In this document: in pieces, positions 8,797 to 63,394 of the stretch
How positions within the stretch are numbered: position 1 is the stretch's first letter
Layout of the letters: every line of letters starts with the position of its first letter
IMG/VR virus record: IMGVR_UViG_3300023184_000024
Coordinates: 1-64,000 of that record
DNA: 64,000 nucleotides
Direction: 5' to 3' (one strand)
Program-made: the position numbers and the translations under genes
The notes under the pieces: generated by a model
What the model was told of the DNA's origin: nothing
Database searches by the model: none
The model's input: the letters and a program-made list of their open reading frames with translations, nothing else

Positions 8797-8972
8797 TGCA
8801 ACAGTTTACACTCACACGCAAGCAAGTTGAAGAAATTTATCGTATATTCAAAGATAATGGTGATGCATTGACCCAAGTTGAAATCTTGGTTGAAAGCACA
8901 AATGGCATTGGGCCCACGATGACTGTGGAATACTCGGCCACACTTGATATAACTGACACGGAGAATTGGTAA
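8796..8972 (+). CDS. small hypothetical protein (58 aa)
   Basis: MQQFTLTRKQ...NGIGPTM...DITDTENW; TAATG-coupled at both ends. Confidence 0.7.
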   Translation: MQQFTLTRKQVEEIYRIFKDNGDALTQVEILVESTNGIGPTMTVEYSATLDITDTENW

Positions 8973-9703: not shown

Positions 9704-9957
9704 TGATTAATTTTATTACTGCAAGTCCCATGGATTATACTGTGGGCATGTTAAACAAAAAACGTACCCCAAATTTTAGCCTTACATCGACGCAATATGC
9801 ACAGTGGAAAAAACGCTACACGTTTGATGGACTGCGAGGGGCAAAATACGGTCAGAGTTTTTGCCAACAATTTGACATTGTAGATAATATCTTACAATAT
9901 TGTTTACCCCCACTTGATGCTGATAGCTATATACAGGAACATTATATTGTCGAATGA
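9703..9957 (+). CDS. hypothetical protein
   Basis: Coupled ORF; YGQSFC motif. Confidence 0.65.
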   Translation: MINFITASPMDYTVGMLNKKRTPNFSLTSTQYAQWKKRYTFDGLRGAKYGQSFCQQFDIVDNILQYCLPPLDADSYIQEHYIVE

Positions 9958-21556: not shown

Positions 21557-21767
21557 AGAAGAAGGTTTTAAGATAGACGGACAGGTAATTGATGTACTGC
21601 CCAACGCAATGTTTAGGGTTAAATTATCCAATCTGGATGAGCCTATTACCGGCATAATTTCGGGAAAAATGCGACAACACAATATTAAAATTCTACTAGG
21701 TGACACAGTAGAAGTAGAGTTTAGCCCATACGATTTAACACGTGGTCGTATTACCCGACGCAAATAA
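21549..21767 (+). CDS. infA: translation initiation factor IF-1
   Basis: AKEE...LPNAMFRV...SGKMR...[18 protein letters not shown]. Confidence 0.95.
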
Positions 21768-23324: not shown

Positions 23325-23382
23325 TTTAGAAGTGTAACTGTGTTCAATTCCGGTAAATACTGGAATACAAGGACACAGTTAA

Positions 23383-28572: not shown

Positions 28573-28642
28573 AATTTAACCAGGACCCTCTAGAATATTA
28601 ATAAACTCTCCGCCATAAATACTCGACACAGGAAAATCAAGC

Positions 28643-40159: not shown

Positions 40160-40721
40160 TGCCGATGGCGTACTCTTAAACTGGGAGTATGCTTTTAGTA
40201 TCTGGATGGAACAGCACGGGTTTGAAAAAATACCCGGTGGCGATTTAAACTACGACATTGGTGAACGTTACAACATTTCCTGGGATCAAGGGAAAAAACT
40301 AATCAAGATGTTCAACGAATCAGCATCTATTGGATTTTTGCCTCCCTTGCGTGATGCCATGTACTATGTCAAGAGACTGCACGAAGAACATGGCTATGTG
40401 TTTCACTGTATTACTAGCCTGAGTTCCGATGTCAATGCACAGCGTTTGAGAGAAATGAATCTAAGCAAGTTGTTTGGGGACACCGTGTTTCAACGAATTG
40501 TGTGTTTAGAAACAGGTGCAGACAAAAACGATGCCTTGGAACCTTACAGAGATAGCGGATGTTGGTGGGTCGAAGACAAACCAGAAAATGCCGAGGTTGG
40601 CCACAGCATGGGCTTACGTTCTATATTAATGGAACATGGACACAACATGACTCACCATAACAATGATATTCCTGTGGTCAAGAATTGGAAAGAAATTTAC
40701 GATATTGTGGTTGATCAGTGA
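40092..40721 (+). CDS. HAD-family 5'(3')-deoxyribonucleotidase-like protein
   Basis: DADGVL...ITS...K...VEDK..N. Confidence 0.85.
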   Translation: MDTKLSNHKKPQKHNPKQLILVDADGVLLNWEYAFSIWMEQHGFEKIPGGDLNYDIGERYNISWDQGKKLIKMFNESASIGFLPPLRDAMYYVKRLHEEHGYVFHCITSLSSDVNAQRLREMNLSKLFGDTVFQRIVCLETGADKNDALEPYRDSGCWWVEDKPENAEVGHSMGLRSILMEHGHNMTHHNNDIPVVKNWKEIYDIVVDQ

Positions 40722-41701
40722 CCACAGGCAGCAACACAGGCATACAACTTTCCGTGTGCTATGCTGGGCAATGCCCAAGTTTTTTCCACTAGGTCAAACC
40801 AATCGATACAGTGCTCTAAGCTGTGATGTTTGGCATTGTTTTCTTTGACCATGTCTTTGAATTGGCTATTGCCAGGCTGATGCATGGTACCAGGAAAGAA
40901 CCCTAGAAAACAACACGGGTATATAGATCCGTCAGCAGCCACATAAATTTCTTTTTGTTTTATGTGAGCACATTTTATTTCTGCGTCATCGTTGACCCAG
41001 GGTATTTTCTTTGTGTGATCAAACCAGGTCACATGACTTTCAAGCAACACATCAACCTTGGGTGGCTCGGGTTCGGGACTGCCCAACCAATGACTAAATT
41101 CGCCATCTCTTGTGAACACCGGTCCTTGATTGCGTCCGTGATCTCGTAGTACGAACTCCGAAAACCCTAGTTGACTGCTCATTGCTCGACATGCATCAAG
41201 CTGATGTTGATTGTGTGTGAATGGAATAAACTTCCAAACAGCGTTGCCGCCTACAGCAATCAAGGCCTTGGCATTTTCTAGTATTTTCCCCCATTGGGTA
41301 TCTTGGCGATACAAGCTGTGTGTGTCTTCAAGACCGTCTAATGCAAACAGCACTTTGATTCGAGGATTACTTAATTGCTGCCACCAAGCAGGAGAACGAG
41401 TACTGCCGTTGGTTTCAATTTGTATGTGCGCACTGCTGTTGTCTAAAAAATAGTCAACAATGGCCAGGGCATCACTGGCCAGACTAAAGTCCCCAAGGTT
41501 GCCATTGAAGTTTACACGATTGATTTGCTTTAGGAACGCAGGAGTGAATATGTGTTGAATATCATCAAGTGATAATTCAGTCAATGGGTAACCACCGTTG
41601 AACTCCGATCCCCGATAGTTGCGCATACACATGGGACACCGGGCATTGCATCGAGTGCTGAGTTCAATGTGCAATGCCCGAATTTGGTCTACTTTGATCA
41701 T
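40715..41701 (-). CDS. radical SAM protein with twitch/SPASM domain
   Basis: CNARCPMC, TNG, DG, G.IYPCC, C...CG. Confidence 0.9.
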   Translation of the reverse strand: MIKVDQIRALHIELSTRCNARCPMCMRNYRGSEFNGGYPLTELSLDDIQHIFTPAFLKQINRVNFNGNLGDFSLASDALAIVDYFLDNSSAHIQIETNGSTRSPAWWQQLSNPRIKVLFALDGLEDTHSLYRQDTQWGKILENAKALIAVGGNAVWKFIPFTHNQHQLDACRAMSSQLGFSEFVLRDHGRNQGPVFTRDGEFSHWLGSPEPEPPKVDVLLESHVTWFDHTKKIPWVNDDAEIKCAHIKQKEIYVAADGSIYPCCFLGFFPGTMHQPGNSQFKDMVKENNAKHHSLEHCIDWFDLVEKTWALPSIAHGKLYACVAACGH

Positions 41702-42472: not shown

Positions 42473-42641
42473 GTGTAACTCTCCTTGTTTCATGTTGGTC
42501 GCTACCTTTCGCACTGGTATTTAGGCTCTGTGACCTGGAGGTTTTATGCGGGTACTTTTCGTTAATATATGTGCTAAGTATTAGGCTCCACACAGCAGAT
42601 CATCAAAATTGTGCTAACGCATCACAGCCATAAATACCTGT

Positions 42642-43750: not shown

Positions 43751-44386
43751 ATGCAACTAAAAAGCTTTGGTTGTAGCTTTGTGTTTGGCAGCGACCTGCG
43801 TGATACCGGCACCCATGCTACTCCCAGTCAATTAACTTGGCCCGCACTGTTGGCCCGACAGTTAGGACACGAATATGCGTGTCATGCTTGTCCGGGTGTG
43901 GGCAATCTCTACATACTAGAACAATTATTAAATGAATTAACCAGCAATGATCCTGCTGTGTATGTTGTAAATTGGACCTGGATCGATCGTTTTGATTACA
44001 CAGAGCATGACAATTCCTGGGCCAGTTTGCGTCCTGGCGACGATAACAGCACTGCCAGGTTCTATTATAAAAATCTACATTCTCAATATCGGGACAAGCT
44101 CACAACACTGTCGTTGATCAAGCTGGCAATTGATGCACTCCTACAGAAAAAGCAAAGTTTCATAATGACTTACATGGATGATTTAATCTTTGAAACACAA
44201 TGGCATACCAGTCCTGCCATTGCCAGTATGCAGGAGTATGTGCAGCCGTATCTGCGCAATTTTGATGGTTTGAATTTTTTAGCTTGGGCTCAACACAACA
44301 ACTTTGAAATAAGCCCAACTCTGCACCCACTGGAGGCAGCACACAGTGCCGCTGCCAATTTAATACTGAATCAAAGCTTGGTGTAG
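43751..44386 (+). CDS. SGNH/GDSL-like hydrolase
   Basis: FGCSFVFG, WP.L, G.GN, WT..DR, C-terminal HP. Confidence 0.7.
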   Translation: MQLKSFGCSFVFGSDLRDTGTHATPSQLTWPALLARQLGHEYACHACPGVGNLYILEQLLNELTSNDPAVYVVNWTWIDRFDYTEHDNSWASLRPGDDNSTARFYYKNLHSQYRDKLTTLSLIKLAIDALLQKKQSFIMTYMDDLIFETQWHTSPAIASMQEYVQPYLRNFDGLNFLAWAQHNNFEISPTLHPLEAAHSAAANLILNQSLV

Positions 44387-45099
44387 ACAAAATACAGTCT
44401 ATCGTTGGCGTCTTTTTTAAAGGTTTCCAATTTTAAATTGTAGCGTTCTGCAAACTCATTTACTACTTCGAACGTCCAAGGAAATATTTCCACATACGGC
44501 CCTGTCTTGTGCGTGATTCCGGGATTGGCTCGCAAATAGAATCGACCGCCAGGTTTCAATAAATTCACACAGTGTGCAAAACGTGCTTCGATTTCCGCAC
44601 GATCATTGAAGTTTATTGAACCCAGTGCCATGATCACATCATGTGATTCAGGCTTGACCTTGTAGTCTAGAATGTCTACTTCGTAGTCAGCACAGTTGTT
44701 GTAGGGATCAATACCAATTAGGTTGTTGATACGCCCTTTAAACGGATGATATCCACATCCCACGTCTAGCACCCGTTCAGGATTTAGCTTGTTGATTTCT
44801 TCAGCCAACTCCCATCCGGTGTGTTCATAGTCACCAGTCCTGGGCTTCCATATTTCACTGAAGAAACGCAGGATATAGCGTTCACTTAGGTCATTGACAA
44901 TGTCTTTTAATGTGCCTACATAATCGCAGGGCAAGTGCAGTTCTGCTTCCACTGCATCTTTGAACTTTTTGTAACGGGCCGGAGTCCAAGGTAGGTCTTG
45001 TATCTGCGTGTCTGCGTCAACAGTGACGTTGGCGTACTTGGGTAAATTAAAAGAGTCCTGCAAATTTTTGCAGATTAGGTTAAAAATTTTGGTGTTCAT
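44371..45099 (-). CDS. class I SAM methyltransferase with N-terminal ACP-like region
   Basis: VLDVGCG, GID, LLKPGG. Confidence 0.85.
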   Translation of the reverse strand: MNTKIFNLICKNLQDSFNLPKYANVTVDADTQIQDLPWTPARYKKFKDAVEAELHLPCDYVGTLKDIVNDLSERYILRFFSEIWKPRTGDYEHTGWELAEEINKLNPERVLDVGCGYHPFKGRINNLIGIDPYNNCADYEVDILDYKVKPESHDVIMALGSINFNDRAEIEARFAHCVNLLKPGGRFYLRANPGITHKTGPYVEIFPWTFEVVNEFAERYNLKLETFKKDANDRLYFVYTKL

Positions 45100-45191
45100 A
45101 AAAAATTTGGTAAATAACTTAGAATTTTTACAAGACCACTAAAATTTTTAATCAGTGCCTTGTTTTTGATTATACTATTTAAGGAGTTACA

Positions 45192-46169
45192 ATGTCAATC
45201 AAAAAATTATTGCTAGCCGCTTTATTAATGCCAATTATGGCATTTGCTTGGGAACCCACCAAACCTGTACAGGTTTATATTGGAAATACACCGGGCGCAG
45301 GTAACGAAATGGCCTTTAGGAAACTGGCTGAAATCGTTCAGAAACATAATCCCAAATTTGTTTATGTTGTACAAAACATTCCCGGGGCAGATTCAGTTAT
45401 TGCTAACAACCGGTTTTTAGAAGCACCCAATGATGGCTATACAATTAACTTGCCCAGCCACATGAGTAGCTATGTTACAAATGACATTTGGGAAAAGTCA
45501 ATTAAGAAATACAATTATGACTCATTTATTGATGTGCTCACAATGGGCAAATCACCATTGGTCCTAGTTGCTGGTGTCAAAAGCGGCATCAACACCCCAC
45601 AGGAGTTTGTGAAGTATATTCAAAGTGGTAGAACAATCAGTATTGCCATTGGTGGAGGCGCACATCGTACAGCATTTGAATACTTAATGGAAAAAGGTCG
45701 GGGCAATAAAGACACAGTCAAACCTATTAAATTTAACGGTCCAATGCCAGCCGTGACCAGTGCCGCAAGCTATGATGGTAAAACAGGTACGGAATTTGCT
45801 ATTATTCCTATTGCGGTTGCAAAAGCATTAGTTGACGCGGGCAAGGTTAAACCAATTGGCTTTACTGGTACACAACGGATGGCACAGTTTCCTAATGTTC
45901 CGTTGTTGCGTGATGTAGCACCTGGCATCAATGTGTATGCTGCCTGGAGTATTCAATTGCCGCCTGGGACAAGTAAAGATATTGTTGAGTGGTACCAACA
46001 GCAGTTTAGCAAAGCAGTGCGTTCAGCAGAGTACAAAGAATACACAGATGCCAATGTTATATTCTACGCAGAAGATGAACTTACACCTGCAGGATTAAAG
46101 CGTCACATGGATGAACTACGTGCGGCATTTATTCCTGTGTTAAGCAAAATTGATTTAGGTAAAGAATGA
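45192..46169 (+). CDS. Bug/TctC tripartite tricarboxylate transporter substrate-binding protein
   Basis: Signal peptide; PGAG, N.PGA, PNDGYT, FPNVP, P.GT. Confidence 0.88.
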   Translation: MSIKKLLLAALLMPIMAFAWEPTKPVQVYIGNTPGAGNEMAFRKLAEIVQKHNPKFVYVVQNIPGADSVIANNRFLEAPNDGYTINLPSHMSSYVTNDIWEKSIKKYNYDSFIDVLTMGKSPLVLVAGVKSGINTPQEFVKYIQSGRTISIAIGGGAHRTAFEYLMEKGRGNKDTVKPIKFNGPMPAVTSAASYDGKTGTEFAIIPIAVAKALVDAGKVKPIGFTGTQRMAQFPNVPLLRDVAPGINVYAAWSIQLPPGTSKDIVEWYQQQFSKAVRSAEYKEYTDANVIFYAEDELTPAGLKRHMDELRAAFIPVLSKIDLGKE

Positions 46170-46748
46170 ATGTCTTTACCTAAAAGAATATTCTTTGCAG
46201 GTGTACCAGGATCTCGTTGGTCCGGGGTTGCACAACTATTAGAAACTGTACCAGGGTTTAACACAAGCGATCGCACACCCGAGCGCACGTTTATCTTTAA
46301 ACCCTTTTCAGATCATTTAGGCGCATACTTTGGTTCGGGCATGGAATTCCCACTGGATTTAAACCCTGCTAATATTGATAGCGCACACACTACATTGGAT
46401 GGCTGTAGATTAATTAAAGCACATGAGTGGGCATACCATTTAGATGCAATTAAGCAACAGTACCCCGAAGATTGGATCATAATGGTATATCGTCCAGACA
46501 CTATTAGTTTTGCCTGGTGGAATGGTGCAGGCGGGTTTAATATTACATATCCCAAGTATGATGCATTTAAAGATGCCACAAATATGATGTGTGAAATCGC
46601 GCAAATGAATAAATCTATCCTGGAGTTTTCGTATAAACACAATGCGACTTGGAATCATTTAACACCCCAATGGGTATTAGATAATTTTGGTGTCAACAGA
46701 GAAGTTGACCACAAGTTTCATGACATGCTAATTACTATTATAAAATGA
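46170..46748 (+). CDS. P-loop sulfotransferase-like protein
   Basis: FFAGVPGSRWS, HLGAYF, IKAH, YR, ITYP.Y. Confidence 0.6.
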   Translation: MSLPKRIFFAGVPGSRWSGVAQLLETVPGFNTSDRTPERTFIFKPFSDHLGAYFGSGMEFPLDLNPANIDSAHTTLDGCRLIKAHEWAYHLDAIKQQYPEDWIIMVYRPDTISFAWWNGAGGFNITYPKYDAFKDATNMMCEIAQMNKSILEFSYKHNATWNHLTPQWVLDNFGVNREVDHKFHDMLITIIK

Positions 46749-47374
46749 AATATATCTTTGTAGCCGGTGCTCCTGGCAGTAAATGGAGCAGTGTAGTCAA
46801 AAACATCTACTATAGTCCTGATATCGATCGGTCAGACTATAGAGATGAATGGACTTATTATCATGACGCTTCGGGTACTCGGGAACTAATGCACCTGGGT
46901 GCTTACTTTGACCCGGGAATGATTAGCCCGTTGCCTGAGGATTTGACCACGTTGTCAAGGCAGCAACTAGAAGAGATATTTGCTGAGCCATTTCAATTTA
47001 AAGAATCTCGAGGTGTGCGCATTATCAAAAGCCATGTGTTCTCAAATCACATTGACTATTTGCGCGAACTATTCCCTGAAACACCCATTGTAATCGTGCA
47101 TCGCAGTGATGACGCCTGCCTGGGCTGGTGGGTCAAGTGTGGTCATTTCGACATCACTTATCCTGATTATCATGAGTATTTTAAAGATTTAAAAACAATG
47201 GCCCGTATCATTAAAAGCCAAAATGCAGACATCTTAACAGCATGGTGGAAATACAATGATTGTCCGGTAATGGACAACAATCTTCGATTGGCTGCGGCCT
47301 TGGGCATAGATGCACCTCCCCCAGAATACACACAAGAATATGCAGTAAACGACATAAGGGTAAAAGTAATATGA
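46745..47374 (+). CDS. P-loop sulfotransferase-like protein (paralog of 46170..46748)
   Basis: FVAGAPGSKWS, HLGAYF, IKSH, HR, ITYP.Y. Confidence 0.6.
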   Translation: MKYIFVAGAPGSKWSSVVKNIYYSPDIDRSDYRDEWTYYHDASGTRELMHLGAYFDPGMISPLPEDLTTLSRQQLEEIFAEPFQFKESRGVRIIKSHVFSNHIDYLRELFPETPIVIVHRSDDACLGWWVKCGHFDITYPDYHEYFKDLKTMARIIKSQNADILTAWWKYNDCPVMDNNLRLAAALGIDAPPPEYTQEYAVNDIRVKVI

Positions 47375-48036
47375 TAACAGACGAATTTAAAAGCAGTTGG
47401 GATTTCACTAAAAGCACCAGCACATACCATTTTGATCCTACGAAACTGGATCGTTTTGAAGATGTGATCGCACATCTTGGACACATTGAACCCACCTGGA
47501 CAGCGGATGTAGCAGACATTGTTGCTAATAGCAAGCCAGCAACCTGGGAAACACGTGGCTACAAAGGCGAGGGCGTGCTGCCTCCACGTGAAGATTTGGC
47601 GGCCGAAGAATATGACCTAGAGCGTGTGGGTGCAGACCCAAAAATGACAATCACTCATTTAAATTGGAACATGCCCGAATCGCTTAAAAAGATTTCCCGG
47701 CAATTTGCTCTAGATGACTGCATGGAGCGTATTCACGTGCAACGCCCGGGGGAGGTGTGGAATCTACACATGGATAAACTACAGAAATGGAACCCCGAAG
47801 ATCCCAGTCGTATAATGCGTATCTTTGTTCAGCTCACAGACTGGCAGCCAGGGCAGTTCTGGGAGTACGGCAACCATCACTGGAATCAATGGCGTGCCGG
47901 CGATGTTTCAACCTTTGACTGGGCCAACATGCCACACAGCACAGCCAATGCAGGACACCATCCCCGAGTTACACTACAGTTAACAGGCGTTATCACTGAT
48001 CGCACACAAGAATACTTGGCCAATATACCCAGATGA
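47371..48036 (+). CDS. 2OG-Fe(II) oxygenase (Asp/Asn beta-hydroxylase-like)
   Basis: PG....HMD...PHSTAN...PR..LQ. Confidence 0.75.
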   Translation: MITDEFKSSWDFTKSTSTYHFDPTKLDRFEDVIAHLGHIEPTWTADVADIVANSKPATWETRGYKGEGVLPPREDLAAEEYDLERVGADPKMTITHLNWNMPESLKKISRQFALDDCMERIHVQRPGEVWNLHMDKLQKWNPEDPSRIMRIFVQLTDWQPGQFWEYGNHHWNQWRAGDVSTFDWANMPHSTANAGHHPRVTLQLTGVITDRTQEYLANIPR

Positions 48037-48659
48037 AAACACTGTTGATCATTACTGGCCCACAAGGCTCAGGCAATCATTTATGGAGCAAGATCTTTGC
48101 ACTACATCCTGATGTACATGGTTGGCATGCTCTGCTACACGAATACTGGATAGGGCATGATCAGGAGCCTTTTGCGGCCTATTGGGAGAACCCCGATTTA
48201 CTTCAAGATTTTGACTGGAGTCGTTGTGATCATTATGTCACCAGTGTCAGCACACCTTACATGCTCAACGGTGAGCGCACTGTGCCCAACATTGTGCAGT
48301 TTGCTGCCACTGCCATGGGACTGGGTATATGTGTAAAAATTGCCATCATAGGTCGTGATCGTAATATATTAACCTATCAAGAACAGCGTGTGCGTGGCGA
48401 TGCCACCTATGATACAGCATTAAAAGAATATGAAAAACTCAGGACCTGGAGCCCGGTGTTCTTGAGTTATGAATTACTGCATCTTTATCGGGATCTTTAT
48501 CTACAACAAATTGCCAATCAATTGGAATTCCCTGTGGATTACTCTAGTGCCCAGCTGGCAAATATTTTAACAGATGATACTAACAGTAAATATTTCAACC
48601 CTGTGGATCATCATCCCACTGATGATCTAGCACGACACTCTTCAAGGAAATGGAAATAA
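48033..48659 (+). CDS. P-loop sulfotransferase-like protein
   Basis: IITGPQGSGNHL...HP, IGRD, SYE.L. Confidence 0.65.
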   Translation: MKTLLIITGPQGSGNHLWSKIFALHPDVHGWHALLHEYWIGHDQEPFAAYWENPDLLQDFDWSRCDHYVTSVSTPYMLNGERTVPNIVQFAATAMGLGICVKIAIIGRDRNILTYQEQRVRGDATYDTALKEYEKLRTWSPVFLSYELLHLYRDLYLQQIANQLEFPVDYSSAQLANILTDDTNSKYFNPVDHHPTDDLARHSSRKWK

Positions 48660-48660
48660 C

Positions 48661-49464
48661 ATGCCACAACGTATATTAATCATGGGCTTGCCTGGCGCAG
48701 GCAAAACATATCTAGCACAGCACATACTCGAACACTTGCAAAACGAAAAGAAACGAGTGCAATGGCTCAACGCTGACGATGTGCGTAAAAAATACAATGA
48801 CTGGGATTTCAGTCACGAAGGACGTATTCGCCAAAGTCTGCGCATGCGAGAACTAGCAGATGCCATGACTGATGTAGACTATGTTATCTGCGACTTTGTT
48901 GCTCCGCTGGTTGAAATGCGCAACAACTTCAAAGCAGATTGGACCGTCTGGGTTGATACCATAGACAAGGGCAGATACGAAGACACTAATCGAGCCTTTG
49001 TCCCTCCCGAAGTCTACGACTTCAGAATCACAGAACAACACGGGGAAAAGTGGGGCGAGTTTGTTGCCGCACACATACTAGATAATCGTCGTCGTCCTGT
49101 ATTTGATTGGCAGCGAGAAACAGTGCAGATGTTGGGTCGCTGGCAGCCTTGGCATGCCGGTCACCGTGCATTATTTGAACGAGCCATAGCCAAAACTGGG
49201 CAAGTTTGTATAATGATCCGGGATTGTCAGGGCTGGCAGGGATCCAACCCTTTTGCCATAGAACAAGTCAAAGGGTATATTCGACGAGACCTAGACATGC
49301 TGTATCAAGGGCAGTATGAAATACAAGTTGTGCCCAACATTGTCAACATCACCTACGGCAGAGATGTGGGTTATCGGATTGAACAAGAATCATTTGATGC
49401 TGCCACACACTCTATTTCAGCTACTAAAATACGAAAAGAATTAAAAGACCAAGGTCTTTTATAA
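48661..49464 (+). CDS. cysC: adenylylsulfate kinase fused to a HIGH-family nucleotidyltransferase
   Basis: GLPGAGKT, NADDVR, DFS..GR, F.PP; C-terminal GRWQPWHAGH...NPF...ISATKIR. Confidence 0.8.
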   Translation: MPQRILIMGLPGAGKTYLAQHILEHLQNEKKRVQWLNADDVRKKYNDWDFSHEGRIRQSLRMRELADAMTDVDYVICDFVAPLVEMRNNFKADWTVWVDTIDKGRYEDTNRAFVPPEVYDFRITEQHGEKWGEFVAAHILDNRRRPVFDWQRETVQMLGRWQPWHAGHRALFERAIAKTGQVCIMIRDCQGWQGSNPFAIEQVKGYIRRDLDMLYQGQYEIQVVPNIVNITYGRDVGYRIEQESFDAATHSISATKIRKELKDQGLL

Positions 49465-50126
49465 TGAAAACAGTGACCCAGACTGACATTGAAGTGTGCT
49501 CGTGTGGACCATTGGTGTATGTGAGAACACTGAAATGTGCCAGCACCTTTTTTTATTGGAATTTTACAAAAACTTTTGGTTGGCATGAAATCGACTACCA
49601 AGACATTGACTGGGACCGTCAACATGTGTTTGGACATCTGGCTGAACCCATTACACGCAGACACAAAGCCGTGGCCGAGTACATTGACATGCACAGTCTT
49701 GGTCATGAATATCTCAACAATGAAAATCTACAGCAATTGTTGGATGAAACACCAACCTTGGACTGCCATTCTGCGCCGTATTTAGATACATTTCAGACTG
49801 ATGCTTATCGAATTGATTGGATTCCGTTGTCAGACAACAACGATGACAACATTGACATAACAGCTCGATTGTTGCGCACCTACGGCGTCGATAATGTTCA
49901 ATGGGACCGTGATTTTGATCACAGTGCCAGTGCATCAAAAAAAGCTGTGGAATTAAAATTAAAAGAAACATGGGAAAAGAGATATTCCACGTACAATGAT
50001 TTACCTGCATGGTTGAAACGTCATTACTCTGATGATATAACCTTGTACCGTGTAGTTACATCAAAGTTTAATCCTGATGCGTCCAGCTGGACTGACACCA
50101 GTTGGATACGACACCCAACGCCATGA
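49464..50126 (+). CDS. sulfotransferase family 2-like protein
   Basis: YV..LKCASTF...EP..R...D.HS...Y..D..LY. Confidence 0.65.
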   Translation: MKTVTQTDIEVCSCGPLVYVRTLKCASTFFYWNFTKTFGWHEIDYQDIDWDRQHVFGHLAEPITRRHKAVAEYIDMHSLGHEYLNNENLQQLLDETPTLDCHSAPYLDTFQTDAYRIDWIPLSDNNDDNIDITARLLRTYGVDNVQWDRDFDHSASASKKAVELKLKETWEKRYSTYNDLPAWLKRHYSDDITLYRVVTSKFNPDASSWTDTSWIRHPTP

Positions 50127-51049
50127 TCTTGCCTGACTTTGACATACTAGAATTCCGCAATTTGCAACTGGAATATTCGGGCATGGATCACCCTGATTTT
50201 TGCGCTGATCCGGCGCATTTTAAAAAATACACAAAGAAAATACACTATCAATACAACAGTCGAGGTTTTCGAGACAGGGAATGGCCTGCCAATCCGCAAC
50301 TACGAGATTGTGTATGGTGCTTTGGGGACAGTTTCACAGCTGGTGTGGGCAGTCCAGGGACAGACACCTGGGTGCGTCAGGTTGAACAAGCACTGGGCCG
50401 ACCTTGCGTCAACATCAGCTTGGATGGCGCCAACAACCAATGGATAGCAGAAAAAATACAGCGTGTTCAACGGGAAATCAATCCCAGATATATCATTGTG
50501 CAATGGAGTTATCTTCATAGAGTGCCGGCTTCTGCCGACGATTTTGCCGACCGTGTCAACGATGCATGGCAACGATTTTATGAAAATATCCGGGACCCTG
50601 GTTGGCCCGACTGTGCAGACCACAAGAATTTTGTCAATTTACCTGAAGAAATAAAACAAGAAATTGTCAAAGACTTTGGTATTCCTGGTTACTTCGAATA
50701 CCAAAATTCTGAATTAATTGTCAACGACTTTAAATTGGATAATCTCAAACTTAGGCACCATGCACCTTGGATTCCGAGCACACACGAAGAAGACCTGGCA
50801 AGAACACTGGACGGTGTTAAACGTGTACAACGTTGGGGCGAAACAAAAATTCTTCACAGTTGTGTGCCGTTGTTTGCACCAAAAAATATACGCAAGTTAT
50901 TTTACCAGCACTTGTCTGACCAACAATATCATTATATTCCAGAGTTCACACCGCTTGACCTTGCCCGAGATGGCTGGCATTATGACATCAAAACTAGTGA
51001 GAAATTTGCTGAATTGGCAAAGGCGCACTGGCATCAGCAGAATTGGTAA
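50123..51049 (+). CDS. SGNH-like hydrolase
   Basis: YNSRGFR, FGDSFT.G, N....GA.N, QWS, DGWH. Confidence 0.75.
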   Translation: MILPDFDILEFRNLQLEYSGMDHPDFCADPAHFKKYTKKIHYQYNSRGFRDREWPANPQLRDCVWCFGDSFTAGVGSPGTDTWVRQVEQALGRPCVNISLDGANNQWIAEKIQRVQREINPRYIIVQWSYLHRVPASADDFADRVNDAWQRFYENIRDPGWPDCADHKNFVNLPEEIKQEIVKDFGIPGYFEYQNSELIVNDFKLDNLKLRHHAPWIPSTHEEDLARTLDGVKRVQRWGETKILHSCVPLFAPKNIRKLFYQHLSDQQYHYIPEFTPLDLARDGWHYDIKTSEKFAELAKAHWHQQNW

Positions 51050-52151
51050 TTAACTGCGGGTTCCATACCTGCTGTTCAGACTCAATTTGAGCCTGCACTA
51101 CAAGCTCAGTGACTGGCTTGCCCACGGTGGGATTTTCTGCAATCCATTGATTGTAGATTTCTCTGCATTGTTCAAAGTTGCGTATCATAAAACGCTTTTC
51201 TGCTAGAGTTTGTTTTTTAATAGGAACGTTGCCAGATAATATACCTAGGTTAATCATTTTTTCAATGCTGTGTGTGGCAGCCATGTAATTTTTGACATGT
51301 GTTCTTACAAAACTACGTTGCTCCACCGGCAAGTGGGCAACAACATTACTGGGAGCAGATTCGGGCAAGTCTTTGTCAATGTTGGTTGATCCTAGTTTTA
51401 GCAGGCCGTTACTGTTGTCCATGGCCAGTGCTCCTATGTTACTGGTATAATAATTACACCGATTCCAGTCGCTGAAACTAATGCCATAGGTATCTTTGAA
51501 AGTTTGTATTTTTTTCTGGCCTGCAAATATTGGCAGATTCAGCGCATAATTTTCTATGTCAGGCATGTGTCGTTCATAATGAAAATACGAACTTATCCCA
51601 AAATGGCGTTCACTCCATTCTAAATATAGACGATAGTCTTCGAGTATTTTAACCATTACTTCAGGATCAACATCAACCCCGTCGCGATATATTTCATAAA
51701 ATGCACTGATTTTCTCCTGTCCCGAATAGACATTTTTCTTTTTGGTTATTCTATTCAATGCCCATGATATGGCATGCTCAAACACATTTTCTCGACGAGC
51801 TGAAATAATAAAGAAATTGTCATTGAGGTATTGATAAAAAGGCATCAACTCGCTCATGTCATCGTTGCGATTTCGCAGATGATAGTGTGCCAAGCGTGAT
51901 GTTTTAAAATGATCAACGCTGCTCAGCATGTCCACAATTTCCGTCAATGATTGATGGTATCCCCAAGTGGCCTGGTGTTTGCAGACAATTTCTCGATTGA
52001 AATCTGCACTGTAAAATTTGTTTAGACCATTGACAAGTTCGTGCAAATTAATAACAGGCTGACCATAGTCCTGCAACTGCATAAAAACTGTGATCACTCG
52101 TTGCAGTAAAGTACTGCCAACGGCATCTGGCGTGAGTATAAGTACGTTCAT
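50994..52151 (-). CDS. sulfotransferase-like hypothetical protein
   Basis: ILTPDAVGSTLL, LHE, RREN.FE..ISW, YE. Confidence 0.55.
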   Translation of the reverse strand: MNVLILTPDAVGSTLLQRVITVFMQLQDYGQPVINLHELVNGLNKFYSADFNREIVCKHQATWGYHQSLTEIVDMLSSVDHFKTSRLAHYHLRNRNDDMSELMPFYQYLNDNFFIISARRENVFEHAISWALNRITKKKNVYSGQEKISAFYEIYRDGVDVDPEVMVKILEDYRLYLEWSERHFGISSYFHYERHMPDIENYALNLPIFAGQKKIQTFKDTYGISFSDWNRCNYYTSNIGALAMDNSNGLLKLGSTNIDKDLPESAPSNVVAHLPVEQRSFVRTHVKNYMAATHSIEKMINLGILSGNVPIKKQTLAEKRFMIRNFEQCREIYNQWIAENPTVGKPVTELVVQAQIESEQQVWNPQLITNSADASAPLPIQQISH

Positions 52152-52169
52152 AATAACTGTATTTAATCG

Positions 52170-53072
52170 ATGACCAAAGACCTTAATATTCTTTATTTCA
52201 GTGGAGGTGGTGGATTCTTATTCTGCCATTTATTGTTGCTGGGTGAACAGCATTTTGCACACATTGATTATCCGCAGGCCTATGATCAGTCCGGGCCTTG
52301 GGTACTACAACTGGCACAGGATCCTGATTTTTGCCAGTGGATCATGGACCAGGGTAGACTGCCTGAATCAGACTACCAAGGATTGAAACAGCCGTCATGG
52401 CCTAGTTACTCAGACTACGTTGCGCAAGGCAATCATTGGCCTGAAGTGCAACAGGCCCTGCTGTATGCAGTGGCCCAAAACAACAATGACATTGCCGACG
52501 TTGCTGAGTTGAATTATCGTAAATTTCGTGTGTTTTTTCAACATGTGATGCAGTCACAGTGGGATCCAGGACGACGTTACTGGAAGCAAACTGAATACTG
52601 GCCGCGCAACGACACCACTGGAACAACACCCATACCGCCAGGGGTGGGCAGACTATATCTACACGGACACAAACTCACTGACTGGTTGGAATCCCCACAC
52701 CCAGGCACAAAAGTATTGTTGTACACAGATGTGCGCAGTCATCTGCGATTGGCCAGCTATAAAAATGCTTGGTTTTACAATGATCTAGACGGCCGGACCT
52801 GGAAACCCACTAGAACAAATGGGCATCGCTGGGTGCTGAGGAACTGGACTGGGCACATGCCCGACGGGCAGCCGGTGTTCAACCAAGCTGCCACTGCTGA
52901 AAAATACGCTGACATTGTGATAAAATTGCAGGATTTGGTCAACTATCCAGAAGCAACATTGGCCAAGTTTGGCATGAGTTTCAACCACAGTCAGCAAAAA
53001 TTGCTGGCGCACTGGCGCAGTCAGCACCCAGTTGAACTGCTTGAACGACTGGGCATCCACCCGAACAACTAA
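52170..53072 (+). CDS. hypothetical protein, possible sulfotransferase fold
   Basis: LYFSGGGG.LF.HLL; internal Y..LK.PSWP motif. Confidence 0.55.
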   Translation: MTKDLNILYFSGGGGFLFCHLLLLGEQHFAHIDYPQAYDQSGPWVLQLAQDPDFCQWIMDQGRLPESDYQGLKQPSWPSYSDYVAQGNHWPEVQQALLYAVAQNNNDIADVAELNYRKFRVFFQHVMQSQWDPGRRYWKQTEYWPRNDTTGTTPIPPGVGRLYLHGHKLTDWLESPHPGTKVLLYTDVRSHLRLASYKNAWFYNDLDGRTWKPTRTNGHRWVLRNWTGHMPDGQPVFNQAATAEKYADIVIKLQDLVNYPEATLAKFGMSFNHSQQKLLAHWRSQHPVELLERLGIHPNN

Positions 53073-61979: not shown

Positions 61980-62414
61980 ATGGATACTTCAACGCTGACA
62001 TTTGATGCAGTGGCATCAGCACCTGGATTAACTCTAACTGTTACTTTTGATCAAGAAACAGTGTTTGATGGCCCAGTAGATGGCAATGTTGTGCATGTAA
62101 AACATCAATTCAATGATGACAGTGACCTCGATCATCTGCTAGAAATTACCATGCAAGGCAAAACCGCCAGAGATACCCAAGTCGACGAGCATGGCAACAT
62201 TGTCAGCGATGTTACATTAACTGTTTCAAATATTGCGCTAGACGACATTGTGCTCAGCAGTTCCTTGCTGGCAAACTGCAATTATCATCATAATTTCAAT
62301 GGCAGTCAACCTGATATCATTGATGAATTTCATGGTATAATGGGCTGTAATGGCACAGTGAAAATACCATTCAAATCGCCAATCTACATTTGGCTGCTTG
62401 AAAACATGGCCTGA
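61980..62414 (+). CDS. beta-rich hypothetical protein (paralog of 6725..7153)
   Basis: GKT..DT.VD..GNI..D...MG.NG...F..P.Y.WLL. Confidence 0.75.
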   Translation: MDTSTLTFDAVASAPGLTLTVTFDQETVFDGPVDGNVVHVKHQFNDDSDLDHLLEITMQGKTARDTQVDEHGNIVSDVTLTVSNIALDDIVLSSSLLANCNYHHNFNGSQPDIIDEFHGIMGCNGTVKIPFKSPIYIWLLENMA

Positions 62415-63394
62415 TGACAACAGTTGATCAACTACACGAAATAGTTTTTGAAGCCACAAGTCATTGTAATCTGCATTGTCCACAATGCGAGCGTTATGAT
62501 CAAGATGGATACCTTCATCCAAAGTTAACCCCTCAACACATCGATTTTGATCTTGTCAAGCAAAACATCAATGTTGCCCAGCTTGTTGGATTAAAGAATG
62601 TAACCTTTGAAGGCAACTACGGCGACATATTGATGCACCCACGTGCTCGAGAGTTGTTTGATTTATTTTCAACAGTGGAACGTGTTGCAGCCACCACCAA
62701 CGGAAGTTTACGCAACAAAGCTTGGTGGGCCGACCTAGGGCGCAACAGCAAAGTTGATGTTATGTTCAGCATAGATGGACTTGAAGATACCAACCATGTT
62801 TACCGCATCAATTCAAACTGGCAACGCATCATGGAAAATGCAGAAAGTTTTATTTCTGCTGGTGGACAAGCATACTGGAAATTTATAGTATTCAAGCACA
62901 ACGAACACCAACTTGATCAAGCAAGAGAACTGAGCAAGACCATGGGCTTCCAAGATTTCCATTGGCAGTACAGTGATCGCAGTTGGTTTCAAGGAAGAGT
63001 TTGGCCTGTCAAAGTTGAAGGGCAGTATCTCTACGACCTAGAACCCGCAAAATCAGTCACTGCCAATACCTCTACTCCAGCTGTGATTACTTTGGACAAG
63101 ATTAAAAAGAAGAATTATACCAATCCTGTGCAGAAGTGTTTTTTGCCACAAGGCAGGCTCTACATCAACAGCAAAGGGCATGTTTTGCCCTGTTGTATGA
63201 CCAGTGGCAAAACCTGGGGGCACGATCTTGAAAGCCGTATGTGGCAACGTTTAATAGGCGACATAAACAGCATTGATCTACATCATCACACACTTGAAGA
63301 TATATTAAACAGTGACTTTTATCAGCATCGTTTGATCAACAGTTTTTCCGGCAGTCCCTACACGCATCCTTCGTGTGTGGCCTATTGCGGATAA
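62414..63394 (+). CDS. radical SAM protein with twitch/SPASM domain (paralog of 40715..41701)
   Basis: CNLHCPQC, GN.GD, TNGS.R...WW, DGLEDT, WKFI.F.HN.HQ, PCC. Confidence 0.9.
   Translation: MTTVDQLHEIVFEATSHCNLHCPQCERYDQDGYLHPKLTPQHIDFDLVKQNINVAQLVGLKNVTFEGNYGDILMHPRARELFDLFSTVERVAATTNGSLRNKAWWADLGRNSKVDVMFSIDGLEDTNHVYRINSNWQRIMENAESFISAGGQAYWKFIVFKHNEHQLDQARELSKTMGFQDFHWQYSDRSWFQGRVWPVKVEGQYLYDLEPAKSVTANTSTPAVITLDKIKKKNYTNPVQKCFLPQGRLYINSKGHVLPCCMTSGKTWGHDLESRMWQRLIGDINSIDLHHHTLEDILNSDFYQHRLINSFSGSPYTHPSCVAYCG

What the first reader, a model, noticed from the sequence alone, without database searches (positions are those of the whole stretch)
43751..53072. Phage-encoded sulfation/tailoring island: candidate undescribed pathway
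Seen: about 12 tightly packed genes, mostly ATGA/TAATG-coupled, behind late TAAATA promoters. They encode an APS-kinase fusion and about six proteins with sulfotransferase-like P-loop starts (46170, 46745, 48033, 49464, 50994, 52170). They also encode a 2OG-Fe(II) hydroxylase, a SAM methyltransferase, two SGNH enzymes and a Bug solute-binding protein. Established: APS kinase makes PAPS, the sulfotransferase donor. Inference: the phage makes its own PAPS and builds a sulfated, hydroxylated, methylated and (de)acetylated product late in infection. The product could be a virion glycan, a remodelled host surface for superinfection exclusion, or a small molecule bound by the Bug protein.
Basis: partly seen in the sequence, partly recalled or inferred. 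Interest (0 to 1): 0.82.

Follow-up and report, generated by a model that had tools for sequence, protein, structure and literature searches.

The report
Phage sulfotransferase and PAPS-kinase gene island
An uncultured 353-kb lake phage carries a real, late-promoter-driven cluster with an APS-kinase fusion enzyme and five divergent sulfotransferase-like genes; it probably makes the sulfate donor PAPS and sulfates an unknown target, a role not yet described for phages.

Summary
The observation largely holds. Twelve ORFs fill 43751-53072, and nine form a translationally coupled operon (45192-51049). TAAATA boxes are 9-fold concentrated in intergenic DNA.

Gene calls:
- Confirmed: APS-kinase + nucleotidyltransferase fusion, TctC/Bug binding protein, 2OG-Fe(II) oxygenase fold, two SGNH hydrolases.
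- Weaker: SAM methyltransferase.
- Five of the six "sulfotransferase-like" genes have remote support. None passes a curated threshold. g52170 has no support.

New evidence ties the kinase fusion to sulfation:
- In other phage lineages the same kinase and nucleotidyltransferase pair (fused or split) sits beside canonical Sulfotransfer_3 genes. This holds in 53 of 80 sulfotransferase-anchored loci.
- One relative fuses the nucleotidyltransferase to a full CysC.
- In the jumbo-phage clade, the Stf0-like gene occurs only where the kinase is present (17/17).

Limits:
- The cassette is mosaic. A universal core (methyltransferase, TctC, g46745, oxygenase) carries optional kinase and sulfotransferase modules.
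- The nucleotidyltransferase resembles NMNAT, not ATP sulfurylase.
- The acceptor is unknown.
- No expression or biochemical data exist.

This is a new variant of a known kind (a dedicated PAPS supply plus sulfotransferases, as in nodPQH). Interest is moderate to high.

The parts
43751..44386 (+). g43751, 211 aa, divergent SGNH-type hydrolase (GCS...GxN...H). It follows the virion structural genes with a 4-nt gap.
   Evidence: No Pfam hit. Family profile A9 against the g50123 family A10: hhalign 91%, E = 1e-6. Invariant S9, G49/G51, N52, H192/H198. Present in 22 of 52 fully visible relatives.
44371..45099 (-). g44371c, 242 aa, class I SAM methyltransferase-like protein with an extra N-terminal domain of about 90 aa. 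Divergently transcribed; universal core gene.
   Evidence: Methyltransf_25 E = 3e-4 and Methyltransf_11 E = 7e-3, both below cut-off. Motif VLDVGCG is invariant. 52/52 relatives, 68-89% identity. No PDB sequence relative.
45111..45116 (+). TAAATA box, 81 nt upstream of the operon's first gene. Candidate late promoter.
   Evidence: Intergenic enrichment of the motif (17 of 28 sites, P = 8e-14). An ATAAATAA box is conserved at -38 to -91 in at least 13 divergent relatives.
45192..46169 (+). g45192, 325 aa, TctC/Bug-type periplasmic solute-binding protein with an N-terminal signal peptide (AFA|WEP read by eye). Core gene.
   Evidence: PF03401 E = 5.5e-21. 50/52 relatives. One relative (L064) carries TctA instead (PF01970, E = 3e-90). 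Nearest cellular homologues are only 22-28% identical.
46170..46748 (+). g46170, 192 aa, paralogue of g46745 (sulfotransferase-like). A recent or rare addition.
   Evidence: 35% identity to g46745, E = 5e-27. 45% identity to a protein of a psbA-carrying marine virus. Present in 3 of 80 loci. One contig of run X3 joins 46139 to 46744 and so lacks this gene.
46745..47374 (+). g46745, 209 aa, sulfotransferase-like protein with a non-canonical phosphate-binding loop (GAPGSKWS). Core gene.
   Evidence: Sulfotransfer_3 E = 2.3e-4, 21.9 bits against a cut-off of 27. Some orthologues carry a precomputed PF13469 assignment. AF2 pLDDT 94.5. Foldseek PDB matches are weak and mix sulfotransferases and kinases. 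BFVD 'Sulfotransferase family' A0A6J5LXF1: TM 0.95, 56% identity. hhalign to the canonical family A7: 20%, E = 1e-3, in a consistent register.
47371..48036 (+). g47371, 221 aa, 2OG-Fe(II) oxygenase (DSBH fold). Core gene, translationally coupled to g46745.
   Evidence: AF2 pLDDT 91.4. Foldseek: proline 3- and 4-hydroxylases and P4H, E = 1e-5, TM up to 0.52. Invariant H133, D135, H189, R199. 52/52 relatives. No Pfam hit and no PDB sequence hit.
48033..48659 (+). g48033, 208 aa, sulfotransferase-like protein (GPQGSGNH loop; GRD...Q).
   Evidence: hhalign of A6 against the canonical viral Sulfotransfer_3 family A7: 89%, E = 2e-6, over residues 1-110. Atlas neighbours are Sulfotransfer_3 clusters at 0.94. 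No Pfam hit in 27 members. 33/52 relatives.
48661..49464 (+). g48661, 267 aa, bifunctional protein. Residues 1 to about 140 are a shortened APS-kinase domain. Residues about 152-267 are an HxGH nucleotidyltransferase (NMNAT-like).
   Evidence: PF01583 47.1 bits against a cut-off of 21.1. Profile against PDB: APS kinases E = 1e-11 to 1e-5, NMNATs E = 1e-6. NT-only profile: NMNAT E = 9e-11, and no ATP sulfurylase at E <= 10. phrog_10255 E = 2e-48. Invariant D39, R42, F50, R55, Q58. 34/52 relatives.
49464..50126 (+). g49464, 220 aa, Sulfotransfer_2-like (carbohydrate sulfotransferase type). Rare accessory gene.
   Evidence: Atlas: feature score 0.96 to viral clusters partly labelled PF03567. Structure TM 0.75 to a viral 'Sulfotransferase family' cluster, and TM 0.65 to viral UDP-glucose-dehydrogenase fusions. 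No Pfam hit. 3 of 80 loci.
50123..51049 (+). g50123, 308 aa, SGNH/GDSL hydrolase. Last gene of the operon.
   Evidence: Lipase_GDSL 24.8 bits against a cut-off of 23.6. Invariant GDS, G102, N105, D283..H286. Profile against PDB GDSL protein 4rsh: E = 1e-3. Co-occurs with g50994c in 17 of 18 loci.
50994..52151 (-). g50994c, 385 aa, Stf0-like sulfotransferase domain (N-terminal about 250 aa) with a C-terminal extension. Convergent with g50123, overlapping it by 56 nt. It has its own TAAATA box at 52160-52165 on the minus strand.
   Evidence: Atlas: Stf0 sulphotransferase clusters at 0.97 with 198 shared features. Invariant TPDxVGSTLLQR and R120..S129. No Pfam, PDB or hhalign support. Found only in loci that also have the kinase (17/17 against 0/18).
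52170..53072 (+). g52170, 300 aa, function unknown. N-terminal glycine-rich loop (YFSGGGGF). Divergent member of a small family that recurs in related islands.
   Evidence: No Pfam or PHROG hit. One 94% homologue in 5.8 billion proteins. 24-30% identical relatives lie in L015, L016, L027, L032 and L060. hhalign to sulfotransferase families: 0.2% or less.

Best explanation
This is a late-transcribed, mosaic accessory cassette of an uncultured 353-kb freshwater jumbo phage.

Mechanism proposed. The APS-kinase domain of g48661 converts APS to PAPS in the infected cell. This step is likely but inferred. Its obligatory partner, a small HxGH nucleotidyltransferase, may supply the adenylylated substrate; that step is speculative. 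Five divergent sulfotransferase-type proteins from at least three families then transfer sulfate to one or more acceptors. These are g46170 and g46745, g48033, the Sulfotransfer_2-like g49464 and the Stf0-like g50994c.

Likely acceptor. Carbohydrate on the cell envelope or on virion proteins is the most probable target. The reasons are the family types, the accompanying SGNH esterases, the late promoter, the position next to structural and lysis genes, and the sugar-modifying neighbours of the same kinase-sulfotransferase pair in other phages.

Structure of the cassette. It has two layers. A universal core comprises the methyltransferase, the periplasmic TctC binding protein, g46745 and the 2OG oxygenase; its chemistry is unknown and may involve an imported carboxylate. 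On top of this sit optional PAPS-dependent modules: the kinase, g48033, and the SGNH plus Stf0-like pair.
For: Kinase domain.
- It matches solved APS kinases and PAPS synthases best (E = 1e-11 to 1e-5).
- It passes the Pfam cut-off.
- Walker A and the positions I identify (from memory of APS kinase structures) as the APS-contacting residues are kept: D39, R42, F50, R55, Q58, invariant in 25 sequences.

Kinase and NT form a conserved pair.
- They are fused in this phage and in Salvovirus phages.
- They are split into adjacent genes in L091, L093 and L095.
- In P0230 the NT is fused to a canonical full-length CysC (PF01583, E = 6e-63).

Link to sulfotransferases.
- 27 of 80 kinase-anchored viral loci carry a Sulfotransfer_3/_1 gene that passes the Pfam cut-off (E = 7e-17). 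In 13 it is directly adjacent.
- 53 of 80 sulfotransferase-anchored loci carry the kinase-NT.
- L091 reads sulfotransferase, NT, kinase, NAD-epimerase.
- Other neighbours include GT25, an FkbM/RfbT-type methyltransferase, UDP-glucose dehydrogenase and carbamoyltransferase.

Within the jumbo-phage clade.
- The Stf0-like gene occurs only with the kinase (17/17 against 0/18).
- All five sulfotransferase-like genes of the 64-kb window lie inside about 6 kb.

Operon coupling and the late-type TAAATA box. Per-gene sulfotransferase evidence.
Against: - No sulfotransferase-like gene of the island passes a curated family threshold.
- The g46745 and g48033 families have Gly where canonical 5'-PSB loops have Lys or Arg.
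- Foldseek against PDB for g46745 is weak (E >= 0.02, TM <= 0.45) and mixes sulfotransferases with nucleotide kinases.
- The NT domain is closest to NMNAT (E = 9e-11), with no ATP sulfurylase match.
- The kinase lid region is shortened; only model positions 4-94 of 152 match.
- About 60 of 80 kinase-anchored loci have no island gene nearby. Some sit among genes that look like FolE, QueD and QueE. In Salvovirus there is no sulfotransferase near it.
- 18 of 52 relatives show the core without a kinase within 10 kb.
- Loci within a clade are not phylogenetically independent.
- No RNA run was listed, and there is no biochemistry.
Confidence: 0.5

Rival explanations
1. The region is a hot-spot between structural and lysis modules where unrelated accessory genes accumulate. 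On this view the sulfotransferase-like genes, oxygenase, SGNH enzymes, TctC and methyltransferase act on different targets, and 'island' describes position only.
For: - Gene content varies strongly among relatives.
- Other relatives insert Peptidase_C26/GATase, a ferritin-like protein, TctA or an extra SGNH gene.
- g46170 is closest to a cyanophage-type gene.
- The methyltransferase is on the other strand.
- The kinase fusion is mobile across many phage backgrounds.
Against: - Nine genes are translationally coupled.
- The methyltransferase-TctC-g46745-oxygenase block stays together even where its flanks are rearranged, as in L017, L031 and L058.
- Kinase-sulfotransferase adjacency recurs in separate lineages.
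- The Stf0-like and SGNH pair depends on the presence of the kinase.
- All sulfotransferase-like genes of the window are clustered.
Confidence: 0.22
2. g48661 is not a PAPS synthase but a nucleotide-cofactor enzyme. One option is an NMN adenylyltransferase with a kinase, which would rebuild NAD(P) against NAD-depleting defences. Another is a PPAT/DPCK-like CoA synthase analogue. Its proximity to sulfotransferases would then be incidental.
For: - The NT domain's best matches are NadM and archaeal NMNATs (E = 9e-11, 2e-10), then PPAT.
- There is no ATP sulfurylase match.
- In Salvovirus phages it lies beside a COG3236/NADAR-type gene and MazG.
- It occurs in many contexts that lack sulfotransferases.
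- P0271 fuses the kinase to a sugar-type NTP_transferase.
Against: - The kinase half matches APS kinases far better than NadR (E = 1e-11 against 0.02).
- It keeps the putative APS-contact residues (residue roles recalled from memory).
- The NT is fused to a canonical CysC in P0230.
- There is a reciprocal association with Pfam-passing sulfotransferases.
- The NCBIfam NMNAT equivalog cut-offs are missed by a wide margin (23.8 against 127 bits).
Confidence: 0.18
3. The kinase is an ordinary cysC auxiliary metabolic gene that boosts host assimilatory sulfate reduction for cysteine supply. This is how viral cysC is currently read.
For: Viral cysC is widespread in freshwater and marine phages, is transcribed in lakes, and is interpreted this way (PMC10914622; bioRxiv 10.1101/2021.01.05.425418).
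Against: - No cysH, cysD or cysN was found in the island or the window.
- The consistent partners are sulfotransferases and a nucleotidyltransferase.
- It is driven with late genes, when assimilation would bring little benefit (inference).
Confidence: 0.07

Closest known systems
Dedicated PAPS supply plus sulfotransferase cassettes of bacteria: nodPQ-nodH (Nod-factor sulfation), raxPQ-raxST (RaxX tyrosine sulfation), mycobacterial cysNC-stf0. Recalled from established knowledge, not tested here.
   Same: A private APS-kinase-containing enzyme is encoded next to the sulfotransferase(s) that consume PAPS. In nod clusters the sulfotransferase is accompanied by methyl-, acetyl- and carbamoyl-transferases. 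This parallels the SGNH, methyltransferase and carbamoyltransferase neighbours seen here and in L095.
   Different: This cassette is phage-encoded and late-expressed. It carries up to five or six very divergent sulfotransferase-like genes. The partner of the kinase is an NMNAT-like mini nucleotidyltransferase, not CysDN or Sat. The acceptor is unknown.
Animal PAPS synthase (PAPSS1/2) and the Aquifex SAT/APS-kinase fusion
   Same: In animal PAPS synthase an N-terminal APS kinase is fused to a C-terminal HxGH nucleotidyltransferase-superfamily domain (the Aquifex enzyme has the two domains in the reverse order). The kinase half matches PAPSS1/2 kinase domains at E = 1e-7 to 1e-6.
   Different: The C-terminal domain is about 115 aa. 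It aligns to NMNAT, not to ATP sulfurylase (about 390 aa with a PUA-like domain). The kinase lid is shortened.
Viral cysC auxiliary metabolic genes (Kieft et al. 2021; Chen and Banfield 2024)
   Same: An APS_kinase Pfam family member in freshwater phages, probably counted among reported viral cysC genes.
   Different: Those papers place cysC in assimilatory sulfate reduction and do not mention sulfotransferases (one search shows zero occurrences). Here the gene is fused or paired with a nucleotidyltransferase and linked to sulfotransferases.
Phage-encoded Sulfotransfer_3 genes noted in cyanophage and OM43-phage genomes
   Same: Same Pfam clan. The literature states that their function in phages is unclear (PMC10580990).
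   Different: Here several families are stacked in one operon together with a PAPS-forming enzyme. The island members are more divergent than the Pfam-passing phage genes.
NadR / NadM (NMN adenylyltransferase combined with a kinase or Nudix domain)
   Same: The NT domain shares GRFQPFHxGH, NPF and ISxTxIR with archaeal and NadM NMNATs. A two-domain kinase-plus-NT logic is also common to both.
   Different: The kinase half belongs to the APS-kinase family, not the ribosylnicotinamide-kinase family. The genomic partners are sulfotransferases.

Membership tests
PAPS-dependent sulfotransferases (Pfam Sulfotransfer_1/_2/_3, Stf0) | Match to a family HMM at or above the curated cut-off | tested here: not met
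   g46745 scores 21.9 bits against a cut-off of 27 for PF13469. g46170, g48033, g49464, g50994c and g52170 give no hit. Scanning 12 and 27 family members individually also gave none. Some g46745 orthologues do carry a precomputed PF13469 assignment.
PAPS-dependent sulfotransferases | Homology to a family that does pass the cut-off (profile-profile) | tested here: inconclusive
   Against the viral Sulfotransfer_3 family A7 (E = 7e-17 to Pfam): g48033 family 89%, E = 2e-6; g46745 family 20%, E = 1e-3; g50994c family 1%; g52170 family 0.2%.
PAPS-dependent sulfotransferases | Sulfotransferase fold with strand-loop-helix 5'-PSB and 3'-PB elements | tested here: inconclusive
   The g46745 AF2 model (pLDDT 94.5) matches TPST2 (probability 0.91, TM 0.45), Cpz8, 3-OST and Stf0, but equally nucleotide kinases, all at E >= 0.02. 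Atlas structure and feature neighbours of g48033, g49464 and g50994c are sulfotransferase clusters. No structure quota was left for the other four genes.
PAPS-dependent sulfotransferases | Lys or Arg in the 5'-PSB loop (PKxGTT / PRSGST) | tested here: not met
   In the hhalign register, g46745 reads P-G-S-K-W-S and g48033 reads Q-G-S-G-N-H where A7 has P-R-S-G-S-T. Gly replaces Arg. g50994c reads P-D-x-V-G-S-T. K13 of g46745 (R in g46170) lies two positions later.
PAPS-dependent sulfotransferases | PAPS binding and PAPS-to-PAP turnover | not testable with these tools
   Needs purified protein.
APS kinase (CysC, PF01583) | HMM match above cut-off, Walker A, DGDxxR-type motif, and the Phe and Arg residues that contact APS | tested here: met
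   47.1 bits against a cut-off of 21.1. Best PDB matches are APS kinases. GLPGAGKT, LNADDVR (first Asp replaced by Asn), F50, R55, Q58 and FVAP are invariant or nearly so. The residue roles are recalled from APS kinase structures, not tested.
APS kinase (CysC, PF01583) | Full-length domain including the lid (model positions 95-152) | tested here: not met
   Only model positions 4-94 align. The kinase half is about 140 aa. NCBIfam equivalog cut-offs are not reached (35.6 against 138.7 bits).
ATP sulfurylase (Sat / PAPSS C-domain) | Sequence similarity to the sulfurylase catalytic domain | tested here: not met
   The NT-only profile finds no sulfurylase at E <= 10. Only the HxxH stretch aligns to 2gks, with a negative score.
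NMN adenylyltransferase (archaeal / NadM type) | Similarity to solved NMNATs and family-level score | tested here: inconclusive
   E = 9e-11 and 2e-10 to 2qjt and 1f9a, over the first 60-70 residues. NCBIfam NMNAT models are far below cut-off (23.8 against 127 bits). The domain is about 115 aa, against about 170 aa for NMNATs.
2OG-Fe(II) oxygenases | DSBH fold with an HxD/E...H iron triad and a basic residue for the 2OG C5 carboxylate | tested here: met
   208 PDB matches at E <= 1e-3, led by proline hydroxylases. H133, D135, H189 and R199 are invariant in 54 sequences. No Pfam hit.
SGNH/GDSL hydrolases | Blocks I (GDS), II (G), III (GxN) and V (DxxH) | tested here: met
   g50123: all four blocks invariant and Pfam at its cut-off. 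g43751: GCS, G, N and H conserved, Asp of block V absent; related to g50123 by hhalign at 91%.
TctC/Bug solute-binding proteins (TTT transporters) | PF03401 match and an export signal | tested here: met
   75.7 bits against a cut-off of 27. The hydrophobic N-terminus with AFA|WEP was read. Whether it docks on a host TctAB is not testable here.
Class I SAM methyltransferases | Family HMM above cut-off; motif I | tested here: inconclusive
   Six methyltransferase models hit, all below cut-off; the best is 21.7 against 27 bits. Motif VLDVGCG is invariant.

The most novel reading that the evidence does not exclude
Many 'cysC' genes of aquatic phages are not sulfur-assimilation genes. They are half of a compact two-domain PAPS synthase whose NMNAT-derived mini nucleotidyltransferase is a previously unrecognised type of sulfate adenylyltransferase. 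Phages use it to feed their own sulfotransferases, which sulfate virion or host-envelope glycans or proteins late in infection. The jumbo-phage island, with five sulfotransferase-like genes, would be the most elaborate example.
Probability: 0.25. Interest if true: 0.85.

Novelty: new variant of a known kind. Interest (0 to 1): 0.62.

Why it matters
Phage sulfotransferases are noted in genome papers, which say their function is unclear. Viral cysC is counted as a sulfur-assimilation gene in ecosystem studies.

A reproducible genomic link between a cysC-type kinase fusion and sulfotransferases would change that reading. The fusion is found in at least 465 viral contigs. It would point to a phage-driven sulfation chemistry, on virions, the host surface or a metabolite, that has not been described.

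It also makes a concrete question testable: is the 115-aa NMNAT-like partner a new minimal ATP sulfurylase? Finally, the core block (TctC or TctA, oxygenase, methyltransferase, atypical sulfotransferase-like protein) is universal in a widespread clade of lake jumbo phages and has no assigned function.

Tried and rejected
Searches that found nothing:
- DNA searches of the island against 50,697 GenBank phages, in near and distant modes.
- tblastn of g48033 against phages.
- Profile searches of the g46745, g47371, methyltransferase, g50994c, g48033 and g43751 families against PDB sequences gave only chance-level hits.
- An RNA-run search listed none.

Searches that were uninformative:
- Scanning every member of the g50994c and g48033 families against Pfam gave no sulfotransferase hit.
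- Contigs encoding distant kinase-fusion relatives were too short to give context.
- Host inference from TctC failed. Cellular homologues are only 22-28% identical. The 44-78% hits lie in Haliscomenobacter and Flavobacterium MAG contigs that are probably mis-binned phage.

Ideas rejected:
- T4-type TATAAATA as the promoter: not enriched.
- The perfect sigma-70 promoter upstream of the methyltransferase as a conserved early promoter: it is absent in 52 relatives.
- g52170 as a sulfotransferase: no support.
- g46745 as a Walker-A kinase: the loop is one residue short (GxxGxK) and tolerates Lys to Arg.

Four literature searches for phage-encoded sulfation or a cysC-sulfotransferase link found nothing on this.

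Full report
SOURCE AND REALITY OF THE REGION

The window equals bases 1-64000 of IMG/VR contig 3300023184_000024 (352,754 bp). Locus and window coordinates coincide. The contig comes from a lake-water metagenome.

It has no nucleotide relative among 50,697 GenBank phages. It does encode tail fibres, a clamp loader, PhoH, and a ClpA/B-like ATPase. The ATPase is shared with jumbo myoviruses such as Atu_ph07 and PA5oct at about 39% identity.

Contigs from the source sample tile 45100-51000 without a mismatch. So do contigs from three runs of an independent study. One contig of run X3 joins 46139 to 46744, so a co-occurring strain lacks g46170. The island is not an assembly artefact.

ANATOMY

Twelve ORFs fill 43751-53072. 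Nine + strand genes from g45192 to g50123 are joined by -4, -1, 0 or +1 nt, which is an operon with translational coupling.

- g43751 follows two virion structural genes (phrog_12928, phrog_13138) after a 4-nt gap.
- The methyltransferase g44371c and the Stf0-like g50994c are on the minus strand. Each is convergent with its upstream neighbour.
- A GH19 endolysin and a spanin-like gene follow at 53095 and 53735.

PROMOTERS

The T4 consensus TATAAATA is not enriched (2 sites against 1.95 expected). TAAATA is not enriched overall either (28 against about 40).

Its placement is far from random. Seventeen of 28 sites lie in the 6.6% of the window that is intergenic (P = 8e-14). They are typically 10-30 nt upstream of start codons. 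The genes concerned include:

- a tail-fibre gene (box at 28616);
- the 930-aa ORF at 23383 (box at 23354);
- structural gene g42642 (box at 42631);
- the endolysin (box at 53070);
- g50994c (minus strand, box at 52160);
- the methyltransferase (minus strand, box at 45176);
- the operon (box at 45111, 81 nt upstream of g45192).

An ATAAATAA box at the equivalent position is kept in at least 13 divergent relatives whose intergenic sequence otherwise differs. Timing itself is inferred only from the company the motif keeps.

A perfect TTGACA-18-TATAAT on the minus strand (45198-45169) is not conserved in relatives.

GENE BY GENE

g45192 is a TctC/Bug binding protein (E = 5.5e-21) with an export signal.

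g47371 has no Pfam hit. Its alignment-based AF2 model (pLDDT 91) is a double-stranded beta-helix. It is closest to proline 3- and 4-hydroxylases and prolyl-4-hydroxylase (E = 1e-5). H133-x-D135, H189 and R199 are invariant in 54 sequences.

g50123 is an SGNH hydrolase with all four blocks. g43751 is a divergent relative (hhalign 91%).

g44371c hits six methyltransferase models below threshold and keeps motif I.

THE KINASE FUSION

g48661 matches APS_kinase above the Pfam cut-off, but only over the first 94 of 152 model positions.

- A 25-sequence profile finds APS kinases and PAPS synthase kinase domains first (E = 1e-11 to 1e-5), ahead of PSTK.
- Walker A and five further residues are invariant: D39, R42, F50, R55, Q58. 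From my knowledge of APS kinase structures these correspond to the APS contacts.
- The C-terminal 115 residues carry GRWQPWHAGH, NPF, YGRDVGY and ISATKIR.
- A domain-only profile matches NadM and archaeal NMNATs (E = 9e-11, 2e-10), then PPAT. No ATP sulfurylase appears at E <= 10.

The kinase step to PAPS is therefore well grounded. The claim that the phage makes APS itself is not.

THE SULFOTRANSFERASE-LIKE GENES

None passes a curated threshold. The evidence is graded as follows.

- g48033: hhalign 89% (E = 2e-6) to a viral family that itself scores E = 7e-17 against Sulfotransfer_3. Its Atlas neighbours are Sulfotransfer_3 clusters.
- g46745 and its paralogue g46170 (35% identity): Sulfotransfer_3 E = 2.3e-4. 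Some orthologues carry a precomputed PF13469 assignment. A 56%-identical BFVD entry is named 'Sulfotransferase family' (TM 0.95). hhalign gives 20% in a consistent register. Foldseek against PDB is weak and mixes TPST2, Cpz8, 3-OST and Stf0 with nucleotide kinases.
- g50994c: language-model neighbours are Stf0 clusters (0.97, 198 shared features). It has a PDxVGSTLLQR loop and an R...S motif.
- g49464: neighbours are Sulfotransfer_2-labelled viral clusters, with structural TM 0.75. Some neighbours are fusions to UDP-glucose dehydrogenase.
- g52170: an orphan with one close homologue. Five relatives at 24-36% identity lie in other islands. There is no profile similarity to any sulfotransferase family.

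In the g46745 and g48033 families the canonical Lys/Arg of the 5'-PSB loop is Gly. This defining feature is not met. They may be atypical in mechanism or in donor.

COMPARATIVE GENOMICS INSIDE THE CLADE

g46745 has 271 confirmed relatives in IMG/VR and 4,902 protein clusters in the protein collection.

In 52 loci with a full view of the region, gene presence is:

| Gene | Loci (of 52) |
|---|---|
| Methyltransferase g44371c | 52 |
| Oxygenase g47371 | 52 |
| TctC g45192 | 50 |
| Kinase fusion g48661 | 34 |
| g48033 | 33 |
| g43751 | 22 |
| g50123 | 18 |
| g50994c | 17 |
| g52170-like | 3 |
| g49464 | 2 |

- The core block stays together where its flanks are rearranged, as in L017, L031 and L058.
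- g50123 and g50994c travel as a pair (17 of 18 loci).
- g50994c is found only where the kinase is present (17/17 against 0/18; hypergeometric P is about 1e-4 by my own hand calculation, not corrected for shared ancestry).
- Other relatives insert a Peptidase_C26/GATase gene (8 loci), a ferritin-like PaaA-type gene (7 loci) or an extra SGNH gene. In L064 a TctA permease stands in place of TctC.

The recurrent transporter parts suggest that the core handles an imported carboxylate.

COMPARATIVE GENOMICS OUTSIDE THE CLADE

This is the strongest new evidence.

- The kinase fusion has 2,142 representative clusters and at least 465 viral contigs.
- The two halves are sometimes separate but neighbouring genes (L091, L093, L095).
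- In P0230 the nucleotidyltransferase is fused to a canonical full-length CysC (E = 6e-63).
- Of 80 kinase-anchored loci, 27 carry a canonical PRSGST sulfotransferase. In 13 it is directly adjacent. Eleven more carry the island's own types.
- Of 80 loci anchored on that sulfotransferase, 53 carry the kinase-NT. About 48 of 56 close relatives have it abutting. Five of 23 distant relatives (43-60% identity) have it within 2-4 kb.
- Neighbours in these lineages include an NAD-dependent epimerase, UDP-glucose dehydrogenase, GT25, an FkbM/RfbT-type methyltransferase, carbamoyltransferase, RCC1-repeat proteins and fibre-like proteins. This is a sugar-decorating, virion-proximal context.

Against exclusivity:

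- About 60 of 80 kinase-anchored loci have no gene of this island nearby.
- Four loci sit among genes that look, by eye, like FolE, QueD and QueE.
- Salvovirus phages place the fusion beside a COG3236/NADAR-type gene with no sulfotransferase.

INTERPRETATION

The best reading is a phage PAPS-forming enzyme serving phage sulfotransferases, with a carbohydrate acceptor most likely.

The island is layered rather than a single pathway. The core trio of atypical sulfotransferase-like protein, 2OG oxygenase and methyltransferase, together with TctC, remains unexplained.

Three rivals are kept with lower weight: an accretion hot-spot, an NAD/CoA-type function for the fusion, and ordinary sulfur assimilation.

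LITERATURE

- Viral cysC is treated as an assimilatory AMG (PMC10914622; bioRxiv 10.1101/2021.01.05.425418).
- tctA is listed among phage AMGs (PMC6359870).
- One genome paper states that the function of phage sulfotransferases is unclear (PMC10580990).
- Searches for a described phage sulfation system or a cysC-sulfotransferase link found none. The library does not cover subscription journals.

LIMITS

- There are no expression data, no host and no biochemistry.
- Only two structures could be predicted.
- Family-library searches were exhausted before every neighbour could be typed.
- Counts of loci are not phylogenetically independent.

Noticed in passing
whole window; examples at 21765, 22326, 23354, 28616, 37196, 42631, 53070, 63399 (+) and 41707, 42518, 52160 (-): TAAATA (often ATAAATAC) sits 10-30 nt upstream of many start codons. 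Seventeen of 28 sites lie in the 6.6% of the window that is intergenic (P = 8e-14). It looks like this phage's late-type promoter or leader element, with unusually short leaders.
   Followed up: partly
window 45169-45198 (-): A perfect sigma-70 consensus (TTGACA-18-TATAAT) lies 69 nt upstream of the methyltransferase start. It is not conserved in 52 relatives; the best of them match 10 of 12 positions.
   Followed up: yes
window 46139-46744: A contig from an independent lake sample (run X3) skips these 604 nt, with 25 other letters in between. A co-occurring strain therefore lacks the duplicate sulfotransferase-like gene g46170.
   Followed up: partly
L064:10634-12070; L002:7761-9018; L027:9429-10001: Related islands carry a TctA permease (E = 3e-90) in place of TctC, a Peptidase_C26/GATase gene (8 loci) and a ferritin-like PaaA-type gene (7 loci) between the methyltransferase and g46745.
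   Followed up: partly
L100, L102, L149, L152 (kinase at about 6001): In some phages the kinase-NT fusion sits between genes that look by eye like GTP cyclohydrolase I, QueD and QueE, plus a second small cytidylyltransferase. That is a possible 7-deazaguanine cluster context. It was not confirmed with a family search, apart from the cytidylyltransferase.
   Followed up: no
L082 (MH319720.1) 8962-9804: A psbA-carrying marine virus from a single-cell genome encodes a 280-aa protein 45% identical to g46170. That is closer than g46170's own neighbour g46745, which suggests exchange of this gene between cyanophage-type and freshwater jumbo phages.
   Followed up: partly
L177, L178, L179 (Haliscomenobacter and Flavobacterium MAG contigs): The only close 'cellular' hits to the phage TctC (44-78% identity) are on 6-62 kb contigs of two Bacteroidota MAGs from one study. 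These are probably phage contigs binned with bacteria. They could also be a weak host hint.
   Followed up: no
window 40715-41701 (-) and 62414-63394 (+): Two radical SAM/SPASM genes (phrog_21308) flank the wider region. Relatives of them also sit near the split kinase and NT genes in L095.
   Followed up: no
window 16234-17352 (+): A nucleotide-sugar epimerase-like gene (phrog_540, E = 4e-57) lies 27 kb upstream. It is a possible further sugar-modifying function of this phage.
   Followed up: no
window 50994-51049: The convergent genes g50123 and g50994c overlap by 56 nt at their 3' ends, and they co-occur in 17 of 18 relatives.
   Followed up: partly
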